Source: Guillardia theta CCMP2712
Lineage: Eukaryota > Protista > Cryptophyta
Assembly: GCF_000315625.1 (NCBI RefSeq)
Contig: NW_005434621.1
Span: 126,744-190,743 of the forward strand
DNA length: 64,000 bases
Reading direction: 5' to 3'
A program made the translations under genes and the position numbers. The notes beneath the pieces are model-generated. The model was not told the origin of the DNA, did no database searches, and saw only the letters and a list, made by a program, of their open reading frames with translations. Of this stretch, positions 1 to 28,989 are shown piece by piece; position 1 is the stretch's first letter; each line of letters opens with the position of its first letter.

Positions 1-1038
1 GCAACATGGCGCTGGTGAAATACAAGGTAACAACGAATGACATGCATATCTTCTTTCAATGATTGTTGTTGTCAGAGCATCCCTTTGAATCCAATGATGA
101 TCGCGGCAAGTAGCATTTGCACCGTATTCGGAATTACTGCATCTGTCGTTCTCGATCCCCTGCATGTATGGCTATATTGCTTCATCTCTTCCATCTTCTT
201 CATTTTCGAGATGGTTGTCGCGTTTGCAATCTTCGCGATAACAATTCATGATTTCCAAACAATCGGAAGCCCAATGTCACTCAAGGTGGTTGAAAGACTG
301 AAACTCATGCGTATAGTGTTCTATGTATCCTGGATGGCATACCCTATTCTTTGGAGTTTTTCTTCTACAGGAGCGTGTATTATGAGCGAGAACACTAGTT
401 CAGTGCTGTATCTTCTCGGAGACGCTCTTTGCAAGAACACTTACGGAATTCTCCTGTGGGCCACAACTTGGGGGCTCCTGAATGGAAAGTGGGACAGGGA
501 TTACGTCAAGGGCAGGAACGTGGACGGCACTTTGATGCCAGAGTATGAGCAGGACTTGGAGAAAGGGAACACAGAAAGGTACGAGGACGCAAGGGCAGGA
601 GAGACCTTCGAAGTCAAGATGTTTGGAAGGACCTTGACCTCTGTTAGGAGGTCCAGGAGGAGGCCCAGGCGCGACATCGTCTTCAATGGCGGCGACCGGA
701 ACAGGTTGTCGGACTCTGACTCGGAGAGGAGGAGGAGGAGGAAGAAGTACCAGCGCAAGGACAGCGAGTCGGAGAACTCCAGCGACGAGAGCATGGGCTC
801 CGAGCATGAGAAGAACAGACGCAAGGGCAAGAAGAAGAACAAGGAGAATCGCAGGTCGGCACCTCCCAAGGAAGATTCAACCTCCGACACACTCCGAGAC
901 GCCGAGATCAAGAGGATTATGGACCTCATGAAGCGAAATGCTGGCAGCGACATTCCCGGCCTTGATGGCGATGGAAGGCTGCGAGATGATGGTGGTCTCA
1001 TACCCACGAGGAACGAGGAGCATGATGATTCGGCTTAG
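1..1038 (+). CDS. GtACR1: Anion channelrhodopsin GtACR1, 3' part (5'-truncated by window); exons <1..26 and 76..1038
   Basis: Exon end NMALVKYK, GT-AG intron 27..75, then SIPLNPMMIAASSICTVFG...WMAYPILW...LLGDALCKNTYG...EDARAGET. This matches the GtACR1 sequence as I recall it. D234 codon at 421, retinal Lys K238 at 433-435. 118 upstream residues plus 320 encoded here gives 438 aa. Confidence 0.97.
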
Positions 1039-25030: not shown

Positions 25031-25553
25031 CCTCCGAAGCGCTCCCCGACATGTCGCAATCCCTCCACCTTTTATTATCACCCTACCCCCATGAATGACC
25101 TCTACCCCTGGTCTCATGACCCTACCCCCCAAAAATACCAATGGGATGATTTTTATGGAGTATATGTTTGGTGCAGAGCACAAATATGATTCTACTAAAG
25201 GATAATTCACTATCGTCCTGATATCATGTTGAAGAGGGTCCACTCTTCCGTGAATACCCCCTGCAGCATCACCACCACCCACTCTCCAGGGGAATTCTTC
25301 TACCCCTACCTCCAAATATGTCTCCGGCAAAGTGGTTCATGTGCCTTATGACAGGAGGAGGAGGAGGAGGAGGAGGAGGAGGAGGAGTATTTCTCAAGTG
25401 CGTACAAATCAACCCCTTCTTTCTCGTTCCTTCGCTGGCTGGGCAGCCCCGAAACCTCCCACCCGCCTTCTTTTCCCTCACTTGCCTCAACTCTCCTCCC
25501 TTTCATCATCTCCCTCAGTGCTCCGCCCATCACAGGTTTGTCGTTCATTATCA

Positions 25554-28426
25554 TTAATCCCTCTGCTCCAGCTCCTGTTCGCTGCCCTTGTTTCCCCTGA
25601 GCCCGACTGTCTCCACCTGCTCTCTGTCAACTCCTCACCTCCTCCGCCGCCTCCGCCTCCGCCTCGTACTCGCACTCGCACTCGCACTCCTCTTCCTCCT
25701 CCCTCTCCTCCTCCCCGCCCAAAACCCATTCACCTGAAGGTCGTCGCCCCATGATGCCAGTGCTGGCGCGTTCCGCAGCAGGATGACGCCAAACACGCAC
25801 TGGTACCGCCATGAGCGAGAGAGAGAAAGGGGAGCGAGCAGGGGTTATAGGAACAACCAGGACAAGGGAAGCGACAGAGGCAGGAGGATGGAGGAGGAAG
25901 AGAGTGGTACGGGAGGACATGTAGTTTCTTACCTGTGAAACGAAGTCGAGGATGATGTATAAGAGAACAGCAAGGTCGCTGGGCAGGGCTGAGCAAGTTT
26001 GAGGGATCAAGAAGGAGCAAGCAAACAACCCGACCATGCGCTCCGTCGATGAGGACCCAAGCCCAGGGATAGATCAGGATGGAGAGCTGTGGCCATCCAA
26101 CTTGAGGAAAGTACTGGCAGTGGAAGAGAGATGGCGGAAGGAGGGGAGGAGAAGCAGAAGGGCCGAAAAGAAAGAGATAGACGCACGGAAGAAGGAGGGA
26201 GGGTACACATGGGACTGAAATTGGCAGAGAAGATGAAAGGAGGTACCAGAGTGATACACATCAGGACGCCGTAGAGTTTACGTGTTGAACGACCTTGCCT
26301 ATTTCGATGTCAGAGCCGTCTCCATCCTCTCCCCTCCCTCCTCTCCCATCCATGAGCTTCACCGACCTTGCAGCTGCAGTCGGCAAGATCCCAATCATAG
26401 GAAGACAGACCCCAATGCAGAATGCGTTTCCAAAGACCTGAGATGTAGGTGGTTCAGTGGGAGTCGGGACTAACAATGGGAAGAGAAGAACTAAGACTAT
26501 CGAACACAGAGTGTGTCACAAGGGGAGAGGTGAAGGAGGACCGCGATCAGCAGGAAAAGTAGAGGCGGAAAGGGGTAATTCGAGAAGGGAGGAAGAGCTC
26601 ATACCCAGAATCCCCATCGAGAAGGAGTTGAGACAAATGCACCAACCATCCAGCAGAGCGTCTGGAAGCCAGTCAGAGAACGCCGAGGATGGGAAGGGAA
26701 GGTGAGGGGGGAACGGGGAGAAGAGACAAGAGGAGCGGGTGAGAAGTAGAGCAGAGCAGAAGAGGGTCAAGGCAACCATCATCGTGTTGCAGAAAAACAT
26801 GAAGACTCTTGTGCTGAAGCCAGCGCCAGTGATGAGGAAGAGATCGAGGAGGATGAGAGGAGTCGTGACGAGCTGCGGCGGGTTAGCATAGCAAGTTCAT
26901 CTCACTCACCCGCATCGGTCACCTGCGCAATGTGGCGACCAAAAAAGAGAGGGTAAGTCTGAAGTGTCTTCCATTCTGAGCAGGAGGAGGGTCAAGGGAG
27001 GGTACTTGCTCCCAAGTTCACCTACCGTGCGGATTCTGTGGCTCCCCCTGGTTCAGAAGTCAGCAGGTGAAACGAGCGACGTTGAGACTTACCAAGTGCG
27101 CAGAGAAAGGTTGAGAGTAGTGCCATGACACTGGAAGAGAAATCAGCCAATGCAACCCCATCGTCGACCCGATCCTGCTCTCCTCCCTCTCTCCCTCCCT
27201 CCCTCCCTCCCTCCCTCCCTCCCTCCCTCCCTCCCTCCCTCCTTTGCGCTCCATCCTCTCTTGCCCTCCCTCCCCCTCCCTTTCTGTCCCTCCTTATCCG
27301 TTGCGTCCTTTCCCCTCGCACTAAAGAATCGAGCAAACTTCTGACCCTCACCTGCTCCCTGAGGCCCCTTGATTCTCCACAGCGGCTGATTTGGAGGTCA
27401 CGCAATACGACATCATATCTTATGTTGCCAGCCTCCTGACCTGAATTCCGTTCCCAGTGGCCATGGCGAGATAAGACATCGTAGTGACGCTGCAAGATCA
27501 AGTCATCCAATGCTTCAGTCCAGCTTGACCCCGCAAACTTCTCACCTGGTAACAAAGAAGGTGTTGAAGTAGAGGAACCTCCTCGCGCTCTCTGCCCTCA
27601 GCCCCCAGCTGCGTAACGCGCTCAGTGGTGGGATATGGCAGGGAAGCATCTGCTTCTTCATCTCTTACATCAGGAACAGGAACGAGCAAATCAGCATCAC
27701 AGCAAAGTTGAGGTAGAGCAAGAAGACACCAAACGGTGAGACCCCAACAACATGCATGATGTTTCTCAACTCCATCGCCTTCCAACTCTCAAGAAAAGCT
27801 TCCTCCATCGCCGACATCGGATCCTGCTCCCCGGAACACGTCCCTGTGCCCCCGTCTGTGTTGGGATGGAAGAAGCTGACGTTGATGGATTCAACCTTCG
27901 GACACTTCCTGTCCCGGCAGTCTACCGCAACGACGTACCAGTTGTGGGAGAACTTGCCTTGAATGTTCTTGAAGGCATCGATCTGAGGTGCATGCATCGA
28001 GTTCTCCGTGATGGTAGCTTTCGCTGCCTTGCTGATCTCTTCGCAGGAACGGCCCATCATGTTCTTCTTCCAGAACGCGTCCCAAGAATTGTGCTCATCA
28101 TCGAAGAAGAAGACAGTCATGGGAGGCGAGCTGTCTTTCCTCGTGATCTTCACTGTCAGCCTCGGAAGCTTGTGGTCGGGGTCTTTATCCTCCTCTTCGG
28201 TCGTCGCGCCGATGCAGAACATCCCAACCAGCACCGATTCCTTGCCAAAACAAATCGGATTTCTGATTTGAATGTTTGTTGTGTTGCCTGACGCCTGCGT
28301 TACAATGGTCTCAGGGAGCTGAGTGAGCGATGGGACCATCGGGAGCTGTTTCAGCGTTCTCATGGGGAATGCTGCGGTGCAGCCCAACAGCAGTGCTACC
28401 GATGCACATAGCCGATTCACGCGCAT
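25554..28426 (-). CDS. 509-aa fusion: signal peptide + TMEM145/GPR180-like ectodomain + type-1 opsin 7TM lacking the retinal lysine (K to Q); 15 exons
   Basis: Exons 28426-27669, 27608-27546, 27489-27441, 27385-27352, 27130-27093, 27047-27026, 26975-26923, 26872-26777, 26661-26605, 26437-26367, 26298-26247, 26086-26035, 25988-25933, 25799-25734, 25616-25554. All introns are GT-AG; total 1530 nt and open. Opsin motifs: SYLAMATGNG (helix B), FFGRHIAQLVTTPLILLDL (C), RWGFW (E), IYPWAWVL (F), LYIILDFVSQCVFGVILLR (G). Confidence 0.88.
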
Positions 28427-28989
28427 TCCGTCCGGGTATCGTCCCTCCCTGAAAGACCCTGCATCAGCATCTCATACACAACACCAGCTGATCTTTCAGC
28501 GCAAACTGCTGTCAGGTCAGCTGATGGGGAGTCAGAGTTCATGTGTTCATGGCATGCACCCTCCTTCCTGTCCATTTCTTCAACCCTTTCCGAATCCTCT
28601 CTCCTCCTCTCCATTCCTCCCTCCAATCTCCTCCTCCCTCCAATCTCCTCATCCCTCCTCTGTCATCCCTCATCTCTCCTGCACGTCATTCAAGCACATC
28701 TTCTGACTTGTTATGCATGATCCCAACCATTCTCGTCCTCTTTGCAATCCCCGCCATCTGTTCTTCGCCTTCCCAGCGCTCTTCCTCTTCAGCTGTCATG
28801 CTGTCGAACCTCGTAAACTTCAACTTTGAGTAAATTTAATTAGTTAAGTGGAAGGGAGAAAACGCGGATAGGTTGGAAAGGCATATCAACAAGTCCGCCT
28901 CACTACTGACGTAACAAGAAGAGAGAGACAGTTGAAACCTCTAGATGGCAGCGGCGGTCATCATGTTGCTAACTTAGTAAGCCAACGGT

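What the first reader, a model, noticed from the sequence alone, without database searches (positions are those of the whole stretch)
25554..28426. Hidden chimeric receptor: TMEM145/GPR180-type ectodomain fused to a retinal-less microbial opsin
Seen: splicing 15 exons (all GT-AG, phases consistent, 509 aa) yields a signal peptide, a ~200-aa Cys-containing extracellular domain and a complete 7TM. The 7TM tracks bacteriorhodopsin helix by helix: FLYFNTFFVTSVTTMSYLAMATGNG, PLFFGRHIAQLVTTPLILLDL (BR PIYWARYADWLFTTPLLLLDL), CNTMMTLCWMVGA, RWGFW, ILIYPWAW, LYIILDFVSQCVFGVILLR (BR LFMVLDVSAKVGFGLILLR). The ectodomain motifs (MFC; VFFFDDEHNSW...SC; NWYVVAVDC; CSGEQ) resemble, from memory, the GOLD-like N-domain of TMEM145/GPR180, which normally precedes a GPCR-like 7TM. 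Established: Lys-less type-1 opsins exist in fungi (Hsp30/Yro2), haloarchaea and cryptophytes, and known rhodopsin fusions mostly add cytoplasmic enzymes or channels. Inference: an opsin scaffold repurposed as a ligand/cargo receptor or ligand-regulated transporter through an extracellular domain. I know of no description of such a fusion.
Basis: partly seen in the sequence, partly recalled or inferred. Interest (0 to 1): 0.9.

Follow-up and report, generated by a model that had tools for sequence, protein, structure and literature searches.

The report
Lysine-less algal opsin with GOLD-like ectodomain
This expressed 15-exon gene of the alga Guillardia theta (already catalogued as rhodopsin-like gene Gt_164142) joins a secreted-type beta-sandwich domain, most like the one on GPR180/TMEM145 trafficking receptors, to a bacteriorhodopsin-type membrane domain that has lost its retinal-binding lysine, so it probably does a job that does not need light.

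Summary
Spliced transcript contigs from three studies carry all 15 exons in one molecule. There are 14 GT-AG introns, a 509-codon frame (ATG 28426, stop 25554-25556) and a poly(A) end at 25530.

The 7TM is a type-1 opsin. The stored RefSeq protein scores Pfam Bac_rhodopsin at 55.7 bits, and a modelled orthologue superposes on bacteriorhodopsin (TM 0.91). No GOST-type TM family matches. Gln replaces the Schiff-base Lys, and D85, W86 and W182 are also replaced.

The gene is not hidden. It is GUITHDRAFT_164142, Gt_164142 of Konno et al. 2020. That paper trimmed off the ectodomain and used a RefSeq model that lacks helix G.

The architecture is a Cryptista-wide family. A monophyletic Gln clade includes this gene, and some relatives keep Lys and an intact pocket.

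The scan found the same architecture earlier on other DNA of this genome (s1-441129). Function is inferred: a non-photic receptor or adaptor.

The parts
25530..28450 (-). Whole mRNA of Gt_164142 / GUITHDRAFT_164142: 15 exons, 14 GT-AG introns, 5'UTR of at least 24 nt, 3'UTR 24 nt, poly(A) at 25530
   Evidence: Single spliced contigs in runs X1, X3 and X9 from three studies. Splice sites and phases checked exon by exon.
27669..28426 (-). Coding part of exon 1 (aa 1-252 plus 2 bases): signal peptide, ectodomain, linker helix and helix A
   Evidence: Translation. 100% match in the genome's own search. AF2 model m44393f5d2e72.
28367..28426 (-). Predicted signal peptide (about aa 1-20: basic n-region, hydrophobic core, small residues before Phe21)
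   Evidence: Read from the sequence. pLDDT below 50 for aa 1-31. No signal-peptide predictor was available, so this is inference.
27869..28312 (-). Beta-sandwich ectodomain (aa 39-186). Family-conserved residues are Cys59, Cys71, Cys128, Cys170 and Cys175, plus Trp163 and His187, and a conserved N-x-S/T sequon at Asn182
   Evidence: Alignment A1 of 24 family members. Model pLDDT 84-94 over this range. Fold searches.
27776..27820 (-). Helix between ectodomain and helix A (aa 203-217)
   Evidence: DSSP on the AF2 model.
27546..27608 (-). Exon 2: end of helix A, basic cytoplasmic A-B loop, start of helix B
   Evidence: Nearly invariant in the Gln clade.
27441..27489 (-). Exon 3: helix B
27352..27385 (-). 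Exon 4: expanded extracellular B-C loop
27093..27130 (-). Exon 5: B-C loop
27026..27047 (-). Exon 6 (22 nt): B-C loop
26923..26975 (-). Exon 7: end of the B-C loop and start of helix C. The motif R-H-I-A-Q keeps BR R82, with D85 changed to Ala and W86 to Gln
   Evidence: Residue table of the family.
26777..26872 (-). Exon 8: helix C (T89, T90, P91 and D96 kept) and helix D start
   Evidence: This exon alone matches PF01036 at E 0.0084, profile positions 76-111.
26605..26661 (-). Exon 9: helix D
26367..26437 (-). Exon 10: helix E and start of the cytoplasmic E-F loop
26247..26298 (-). Exon 11: basic E-F loop and start of helix F
26035..26086 (-). Exon 12: helix F (Y185, P186 and W189 kept; W182 changed to Ile). 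The RefSeq model starts this exon 27 nt too early
25933..25988 (-). Exon 13: first half of helix G. D212 is kept. The last codon, CAG at 25933-25935, is the Gln in place of the Schiff-base Lys (BR K216). This exon is missing from the RefSeq model
   Evidence: Gln aligns with Lys of archaerhodopsin-2 in the orthologue.
25734..25799 (-). Exon 14: second half of helix G and conserved cytoplasmic tail start
25554..25616 (-). Coding part of exon 15 with the stop at 25554-25556. The 3'UTR is 25530-25553

Best explanation
Shown: this is Gt_164142, an expressed 15-exon nuclear gene of Guillardia theta. Its 509-aa product has a signal peptide and a disulfide-rich, probably N-glycosylated beta-sandwich ectodomain of about 150 aa. 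A short helix follows, then a bacteriorhodopsin-type seven-helix bundle with an enlarged extracellular B-C loop. The bundle cannot form the retinal Schiff base (K216 to Gln), and its pocket is rebuilt (D85 to Ala, W86 to Gln, W182 to Ile). R82, T89, T90, P91, D96, Y185, P186, W189 and D212 stay.

It belongs to a Cryptista-wide family in which this ectodomain always precedes a type-1 opsin. Some members keep Lys and an intact pocket, so the ectodomain was most likely joined to a working photoreceptor. The Lys was then replaced once by Gln in the ancestor of a conserved clade that includes this gene.

Likely (about 0.6): the ectodomain is a GOLD-type domain related to the N-domains of GOST proteins (GPR180/TMEM145/GPR107).

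Inferred (about 0.35-0.4): the protein works without light as a receptor or adaptor. The ectodomain would bind an extracellular or luminal ligand or cargo. The polar former retinal pocket and helix bundle would couple or anchor it. The near-invariant basic cytoplasmic A-B and E-F loops and the tail would meet a cytoplasmic partner.
For: - Gene structure and expression: one spliced, polyadenylated contig in three studies; all GT-AG with phases closed.
- Identity: P0064 is GUITHDRAFT_164142 and Gt_164142, with RT-PCR primers at this ATG and stop.
- Opsin fold and family: PF01036 at 55.7 bits for P0064 and E 1e-8 to 1e-29 in homologues. The orthologue model matches BR at TMt 0.91-0.93, rmsd 2.1-2.7 A. 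phmmer finds archaerhodopsin-2 at 1.5e-16, with Gln opposite the Lys.
- Pocket residues.
- Family and taxa: 46 hits in an exhaustive search, and the long ones tested carry PF01036 except two. Taxa are Hemiselmis, Rhodomonas, Baffinella and Goniomonas. There are two further G. theta paralogues.
- History of position 216: the Gln clade is monophyletic at 99/99 support, and the Lys-bearers lie outside it.
- Selection: TM helices are more conserved (0.72-0.84) than the ectodomain (0.67), and the cytoplasmic loops are near invariant.
Against: - No sequence-profile method reaches significance for the GOST link. Pfam PF21892 scores 13.3 bits against a cut-off of 28.1. hhalign against G. theta's own GOST proteins gives prob 0.5-1.9%. 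The PDB profile search is empty.
- Nothing here tests ligand binding, localisation, partners or absence of retinal binding.
- The full-length model is of an orthologue (P0002), not of this protein, and its domain packing is of low confidence (pTM 0.50).
- RNA depth shows expression only, not protein.
Confidence: 0.55

Rival explanations
1. The ectodomain is a generic jelly-roll unrelated to GOLD/GOST, for example a TNF/C1q-like head. It would serve oligomerisation or adhesion (to the periplast or to other cells) on top of an opsin trimer. On this reading the 'GOST-opsin chimera' is only a look-alike.
Against: Three methods that rank families put GOST N-domains first: Foldseek, the Atlas shape search and language-model features for two divergent members. 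The position, straight after a signal peptide and before TM1 of a 7TM, is that of GOST proteins. The weak Pfam hit falls on the matching W-Y-x-V-A-x-x-C strand, at profile positions 90-127 of 131.
Confidence: 0.3
2. It is a light-independent regulatory or chaperone subunit, like the fungal opsin-related proteins Hsp30/Yro2/Mrh1. It would modulate a pump, a channel or the Lys-bearing rhodopsins of the same cell by hetero-oligomerising through the helix bundle. The ectodomain would be secondary.
For: Lys-less opsins with such roles are known in yeast, as cited in PMC7714340. The TM helices are the most conserved part. G. theta has about 40 other rhodopsin-like genes, one of them (GtACR1) 25 kb away in this window.
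Against: The ectodomain is itself conserved, with invariant cysteines across all family members, including Goniomonas. That argues it is central to function. No co-expression or interaction data were obtained.
Confidence: 0.2
3. It is still a photoreceptor. It would bind retinal non-covalently, or use another chromophore.
For: R82, D212, T89/T90, Y185, P186 and W189 are kept. Lys-less BR mutants can be rescued with retinylidene amines (established knowledge; Yamauchi et al. 2019 is cited in PMC7714340).
Against: K216, D85, W86 and W182 are all replaced, and they are replaced consistently in the whole Gln clade. No lysine lies in helix G.
Confidence: 0.04
4. It is a decaying opsin pseudogene, or an annotation artefact that joins two genes.
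For: The RefSeq model is wrong in its last quarter.
Against: There is an intact 509-codon frame across 14 correctly spliced introns. Transcripts are polyadenylated in three studies. Orthologues in several genera have 60-75% identical TM exons. The clade is monophyletic with Gln fixed.
Confidence: 0.02

Closest known systems
Lys-less microbial rhodopsins (Rh-noK) of Guillardia theta, Konno et al. 2020 (PMC7714340)
   Same: It is the same gene, Gt_164142, listed among 42 rhodopsin-like genes. The paper says nine of these lack the Lys and that six of the nine are expressed, without naming them in its text. Paralogues Gt_148137 and Gt_120936 share the architecture.
   Different: That paper aligned only the 7TM. 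Its dataset row starts at helix A and stops before helix G, because the RefSeq model lacks it. The ectodomain, the true residue at position 216 (Gln) and the family outside G. theta were therefore not described.
GOST proteins (GPR180, TMEM145, GPR107/108, TMEM87A/B, Wntless): GOLD domain plus 7TM
   Different: The 7TM here is Bac_rhodopsin (PF01036), not GOST_TM or GPR180-TMEM145_TM. No Pfam N-domain model passes its cut-off. G. theta has ordinary GOST genes elsewhere, and they show no profile similarity to this family.
Fungal opsin-related proteins Hsp30 / Yro2 / Mrh1
   Same: They have a type-1 opsin fold without the Schiff-base Lys and act without light.
   Different: They have no N-terminal ectodomain and belong to another lineage. 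Kinship within type-1 opsins was not resolved here.
Domain-fused microbial rhodopsins (rhodopsin cyclases, phosphodiesterases, histidine-kinase rhodopsins, bestrhodopsins)
   Same: A type-1 opsin is fused to another functional domain in a protist.
   Different: In those proteins the added domains are cytoplasmic enzymes or channels, and the opsin binds retinal. Here the added domain is extracellular or luminal and N-terminal, and in this clade the retinal site is gone.
Flotillin-associated rhodopsins (FArhodopsins) of marine bacteria
   Same: They are a conserved rhodopsin paralogue family reported not to bind retinal (titles and abstracts seen).
   Different: They are bacterial, have no ectodomain, and many keep the Lys.

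Membership tests
Type-1 (microbial) rhodopsin, Pfam PF01036 Bac_rhodopsin | Sequence match to the family profile above the curated cut-off | tested here: met
   P0064 (this gene's RefSeq protein, identical for exons 1-11) scores 55.7 bits against a cut-off of 24.6, at profile positions 5-194. Exon 8 alone scores E 0.0084. The orthologue P0002 scores 78 bits.
Type-1 (microbial) rhodopsin, Pfam PF01036 Bac_rhodopsin | Bacteriorhodopsin-type seven-helix fold | tested here: met
   The AF2 model of orthologue P0002 against BR 1kme/3har gives TMt 0.91-0.93, rmsd 2.1-2.7 A, 25% identity and E 5.5e-13. The window protein itself was not folded whole, because its exons were not joined.
Type-1 (microbial) rhodopsin, Pfam PF01036 Bac_rhodopsin | Schiff-base lysine in helix G (BR K216) | tested here: not met
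   The residue is Gln, codon CAG at 25933-25935. Gln aligns with the Lys of archaerhodopsin-2 in the orthologue. All 11 members of the clade have Gln.
Type-1 (microbial) rhodopsin, Pfam PF01036 Bac_rhodopsin | Counter-ion and retinal-pocket residues (D85, W86, W182, Y185, P186, W189, D212) | tested here: not met
   D85 is Ala, W86 is Gln and W182 is Ile. R82, Y185, P186, W189 and D212 are kept.
Type-1 (microbial) rhodopsin, Pfam PF01036 Bac_rhodopsin | Retinal binding and photochemistry | not testable with these tools
   This needs expression and spectroscopy.
Rh-noK / opsin-related proteins (type-1 opsin homologues without the Lys) | Clear type-1 opsin homology with no Lys at the Schiff-base position | tested here: met
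   The gene is one of the 42 rhodopsin-like genes of PMC7714340, which counts nine Rh-noK among them without naming them in its text.
GOST (GOLD-domain seven-transmembrane) proteins | N-terminal luminal GOLD-type beta-sandwich straight before the 7TM | tested here: inconclusive
GOST (GOLD-domain seven-transmembrane) proteins | Pfam N-domain model (PF21892, PF21870, PF21902 or PF21904) above cut-off | tested here: not met
   The best result is PF21892 at 13.3 bits and E 0.11, in 2 of 24 family members. The window's own exon 1 has none. hhalign against G. theta's CAND6-7_N protein gives prob 0.5%.
GOST (GOLD-domain seven-transmembrane) proteins | 7TM of the GOST_TM (PF06814) or GPR180-TMEM145_TM (PF10192) type | tested here: not met
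   Only PF01036 is found in this protein and in all homologues scanned. hhalign of the family against G. theta GOST proteins gives prob 1.9%.
Fungal opsin-related proteins (Hsp30/Yro2/Mrh1) | Membership of the fungal ORP clade | not tested
   No ORP sequence was obtained. Resemblance is by concept only.

The most novel reading that the evidence does not exclude
The family records, in living species, the conversion of a type-1 opsin into a ligand- or cargo-binding 7TM receptor. First a GOLD-type ectodomain was added to a working photoreceptor, and Lys-bearing members still exist. Then the chromophore was lost and a polar pocket fixed (the Gln clade). On the boldest reading, the GOLD-plus-7TM layout of eukaryotic GOST proteins, and perhaps other non-photic 7TM receptors, arose by the same route from Lys-less type-1 opsins. 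The Lys-bearing members would then be dual-input (ligand plus light) receptors.
Probability: 0.08. Interest if true: 0.9.

Novelty: new variant of a known kind. Interest (0 to 1): 0.6.

Why it matters
Known rhodopsin fusions add cytoplasmic enzymes or channels. An N-terminal extracellular or luminal binding-type domain on a type-1 opsin was described in no paper that I could find.

The family offers a natural series. It runs from Lys-bearing, probably light-sensitive members to a conserved Gln clade that has given up retinal but keeps the bundle under strong constraint. This makes three questions directly testable:
- what an opsin scaffold does without its chromophore;
- whether a GOLD-like ectodomain gates or targets it;
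- whether the Lys-bearing relatives are useful new light-controlled tools with an external ligand site.

It also corrects the public model of Gt_164142. Helix G exists and carries Gln. It also shows that three of the rhodopsin-like genes of G. theta (Gt_164142, Gt_148137, Gt_120936), all without the Lys here, share an unreported ectodomain.

Tried and rejected
- **Joined protein.** Exon 1 was searched by reference. The rest was judged from exon-by-exon translation, from the stored RefSeq protein P0064 (identical for exons 1-11) and from orthologue P0002.
- **Pfam on exon 1.** Nothing relevant.
- **Pfam on N-domains.** In 24 N-domains, only two faint PF21892 hits.
- **PDB profile search.** The ectodomain alignment gave no hit even at E 10.
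- **PF21892 and PF21902 in the genome itself.** No match. These models also missed G. theta's real GOST genes, so this test has little power.
- **hhalign of A1 against G. theta's CAND6-7_N domain.** Prob 0.5%, E 0.12, although the 35 aligned columns fall where expected.
- **hhalign of the whole family against G. theta GOST proteins.** Prob 1.9%. This gives no support for common ancestry of the 7TM domains. The GOST alignment was thin (4 sequences).
- **Attempt to collect diverse GOST N-domains.** The last homologue search gave only 2 hits, so no deep GOST profile could be built.
- **Unbiased structural search.** GPR180 was not separated from other jelly rolls.
- **Homologue searches with P0002, whole and 7TM only.** They did not list this gene's RefSeq model. 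It turned up only through the cluster look-up.
- **Organisms of the Lys-bearing members.** Could not be named.
- **Plastid targeting.** Considered because Phe follows the predicted signal-peptide cut (a cryptophyte plastid-import hallmark). The Phe is not conserved in orthologues, so I treat this as unlikely.
Full report

Yes, to the base. The gene lies on the minus strand. I laid one raw-read RNA run and the Logan contigs of three further runs on window 25300-28700.
- Runs X1, X3 and X9, from three studies, each gave one contig of 1.5-1.6 kb. Each contig covers the stretch in 15 pieces with 14 joints and no differing letters.
- X1 ends in a run of T before 25530 on the + strand, which is a poly(A) tail on the transcript.
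- The raw RNA-seq run gave only 9 reads, most in the orientation expected for a minus-strand mRNA, and one of them crosses a joint.
- After the small boundary shifts that the tool itself marks as equivalent, all 14 introns are GT..AG and measure 45-221 nt. The frame runs without a stop for 509 codons, from ATG 28426 to the stop at 25554-25556.

Exon 1 was used by reference. The rest was judged exon by exon and through stored database proteins.

**2. Which gene is it?**

- The cluster look-up for an exon-1 homologue returned P0064, 'hypothetical protein GUITHDRAFT_164142' (XP_005829306.1, 577 aa).
- Konno et al. 2020 (PMC7714340) list it as Gt_164142 among 42 rhodopsin-like genes. Their RT-PCR primers sit on this ATG and this stop. 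The gene is therefore annotated, not hidden.
- The RefSeq model is identical to the RNA-supported one for residues 1-431 (exons 1-11). After that it starts exon 12 27 nt early and reads through intron sequence in another frame, so it has no helix G.
- In Konno's alignment dataset the Gt_164142 row begins at helix A and ends before helix G. The ectodomain was cut away, and that row holds no residue at the Lys position.
- The transcript restores helix G, with the motif L-D-F-V-S-Q where bacteriorhodopsin has L-D-V-S-A-K.

**3. The membrane half is a type-1 opsin.**
- P0064 matches Pfam Bac_rhodopsin at 55.7 bits (cut-off 24.6). Even exon 8 alone matches at E 0.0084.
- Homologues with complete sequences score E 1e-8 to 1e-29. 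Nothing matches GOST_TM or GPR180-TMEM145_TM.
- An AlphaFold model of the orthologue P0002 (Hemiselmis rufescens; TM region pLDDT about 90) finds bacteriorhodopsin first. TM-score is 0.91-0.93 by target, rmsd 2.1-2.7 A and identity 25%.
- phmmer finds archaerhodopsin-2 at 1.5e-16, with the Gln opposite the Schiff-base Lys.
- In BR numbering the window protein keeps R82, T89, T90, P91, D96, Y185, P186, W189 and D212. It has Ala at 85, Gln at 86, Ile at 182 and Gln at 216.

**4. The ectodomain.**

Exon 1 encodes a typical signal peptide (read from the sequence) and a domain with no Pfam match.
- An exhaustive HMMER search of 1.84 billion representatives found 46 relatives.
- Every long one tested carries Bac_rhodopsin behind it, with two exceptions. 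One is a divergent member that still aligns through the 7TM. The other is a spurious Calx-beta hit.
- The alignment of 24 members shows invariant Trp163, Cys170 and Cys175, and nearly invariant Cys59, Cys71 and Cys128. It also shows a conserved N-x-S/T sequon. These fit a disulfide-bonded, glycosylated luminal or extracellular domain.
- The AlphaFold model (pLDDT 78.5 overall; 84-94 over residues 39-186) is a beta-sandwich with two short helices. A helix (203-217) and helix A follow it.

What the ectodomain resembles:
- The Foldseek top hit in the PDB is the GPR180 N-terminal GOLD domain, 9fow (E 3.5e-4).
- The ESM-Atlas shape search puts a GPR180/TMEM145 protein first, with GPR180 and GPR107-like clusters in rows 3 and 6.
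- The language-model feature search returns only GOST N-domain clusters (TMEM145_N, GPR180-like, CAND6-7_N, PTM1-like_N). The top score is 0.93 with 203 shared features. The same families lead for the 31%-identical relative P0009, at 0.88.

Against the GOST link:
- Pfam TMEM145_N reaches only 13.3 bits, in two members. That hit does fall on the matching W-Y-x-V-A-x-x-C strand, at profile positions 90-127 of 131.
- A PDB profile search is empty.
- hhalign against G. theta's own bona fide GOST proteins, which I located at contigs C123 and C4, gives probabilities of 0.5-1.9%.

I put the GOLD/GOST kinship at about 0.6. The fold class, a GOLD-compatible jelly-roll sandwich, is safe.

**5. The family and its history.**

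Members come from Hemiselmis, Rhodomonas, Baffinella, Guillardia and the plastid-less Goniomonas, so the architecture is old within Cryptista.
- G. theta has at least three copies: this gene, Gt_148137 and Gt_120936.
- Gt_148137 is locus L002. Konno's qPCR primers lie in it, and one 484-codon open frame holds the ectodomain and helices A-F. I read a next exon by eye that would give helix G, with Val at position 216.
- Gt_120936 is P0017, with Leu at 216.
- At position 216 the family shows Gln, Lys, His, Val and Leu.
- Two lineages (P0009/P0059 and P0022) keep Lys together with D85, W86, W182, W189 and D212. They look like working retinal proteins that carry the ectodomain.
- A maximum-likelihood tree puts all 11 Gln sequences, this gene included, in one clade (support 99/99). 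The Lys-bearers lie in the sister group among Val and Leu forms (midpoint root, some long branches).
- The simplest reading is that the ectodomain joined a functioning opsin, and the Lys was then lost several times. One of those losses was the single Lys-to-Gln change that has since been kept.
- Within the Gln clade the TM helices are more conserved than the ectodomain (majority fraction 0.72-0.84 against 0.67). The basic cytoplasmic A-B loop, the E-F loop and the start of the tail are almost invariant.

This is not a decaying gene.

**6. How it most likely works.**

Shown:
- an expressed, conserved, N-out 7TM protein of opsin fold;
- no Schiff-base Lys;
- a rebuilt, more polar pocket;
- a conserved cysteine-rich ectodomain plus an enlarged extracellular B-C loop.

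Inferred: it acts without light. The ectodomain, with the B-C loop, would bind something outside the cell or in the lumen of the secretory pathway, as GOLD domains of GOST proteins are thought to do (PMC9711517, PMC11605061). The bundle would couple or anchor this, and the invariant cytoplasmic face would contact a partner.

I give this receptor or adaptor reading about 0.35-0.4. The rivals are:
- a non-GOLD oligomerisation or adhesion head (0.3 for the domain identity);
- a regulatory subunit of other rhodopsins or pumps, like yeast Hsp30/Yro2 (0.2);
- residual photochemistry (0.04);
- a pseudogene or artefact (0.02).

**7. Comparison with what is known, and novelty.**

Lys-less type-1 opsins are known, and this very gene has been listed among the rhodopsin-like genes of G. 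theta, nine of which Konno et al. count as Lys-less. GOST proteins are known.
- No other paper mentions this gene.
- The scan itself has met the same architecture before on another piece of this genome (s1-441129, probably a paralogue). That follow-up reached the same reading.

It fails membership of GOST (wrong 7TM) and of retinal-binding rhodopsins (no Lys). It is best filed as a new variant of a known kind: a Lys-less type-1 opsin with an N-terminal GOLD-like ectodomain.

New here are the RNA-verified gene model with helix G and Gln216, the monophyletic Gln clade, the Lys-bearing relatives, the range across Cryptista and the conserved cytoplasmic face.

**8. Verdict.**
- Observation: confirmed.
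- Interpretation: partly supported. The opsin half and the fusion are firm, the TMEM145/GPR180 kinship is likely but unproven, 'hidden' is wrong, and the function is untested.
- Interest: 0.6.

Noticed in passing
window 25617-26113 (minus strand): The RefSeq model XP_005829306.1 (577 aa) mis-splices the last quarter. It has 9 extra residues before exon 12 and intron read-through in another frame in place of exons 13-14, so helix G is absent. The published alignment of Gt_164142 inherits this gap.
   Followed up: yes
L002 (G000:C191:3319-6942), ORF 1342-2796: Paralogue Gt_148137. The ectodomain and helices A-F lie in one 484-codon open frame, against 15 exons here. By my reading of the DNA, a next exon supplies helix G with Val in place of the Lys, and the protein ends in E-D-N-L. 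This splice was not checked with RNA.
   Followed up: partly
homologues P0002, P0047, P0048, P0051, P0052, P0037, P0022, P0039 (alignment A2) and L002: Many family members end in an acidic motif (E/D)-D-(N/D)-(L/I) at the very C-terminus. This is possibly a trafficking signal. The window protein ends differently (…E-Q-R-D).
   Followed up: no
P0009/P0059 (locus L006) and P0022 (locus L007): These family members carry the same ectodomain but keep Lys216, D85, W86, W182, W189 and D212. They are candidate retinal-binding 'ectodomain rhodopsins'. Their organisms are not named in the sources.
   Followed up: partly
window 28355-28375 (aa 18-24): Phe follows the predicted signal-peptide cut (…T-A-A | F-P…). 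In cryptophytes this can mark plastid import. It is not conserved in orthologues, so it is probably without meaning.
   Followed up: partly
window 27177-27249 (intron 4) and 25630-25719 (intron 14): Intron 4 holds a (CCCT)n microsatellite on the + strand. Intron 14 holds GC-rich hexamer and GAG-type repeats. The reads tool skipped both as repeats.
   Followed up: no
L003/L004 (G000:C123:162185-165994) and L005 (G000:C4:870714-874421): G. theta has ordinary GOST genes. One is GPR107-like, with CAND6-7_N (E 4.4e-10) followed by GOST_TM in one open frame. The other is a 506-codon open frame with GOST_TM. They show no profile similarity to the opsin-ectodomain family.
   Followed up: partly
window 25397-25533: A separate low-depth contig of run X1 (164 nt, depth 2.8) overlaps the poly(A) site by four bases (to 25533). 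It could be read-through or the end of a neighbouring transcript.
   Followed up: no
window 1-1038 and 25530-28450: Two rhodopsin-family genes lie about 25 kb apart on this contig: GtACR1 (per earlier notes) and Gt_164142. Their RefSeq mRNA numbers differ by nine. I saw no sign of tandem duplication, because the two belong to different clades.
   Followed up: no
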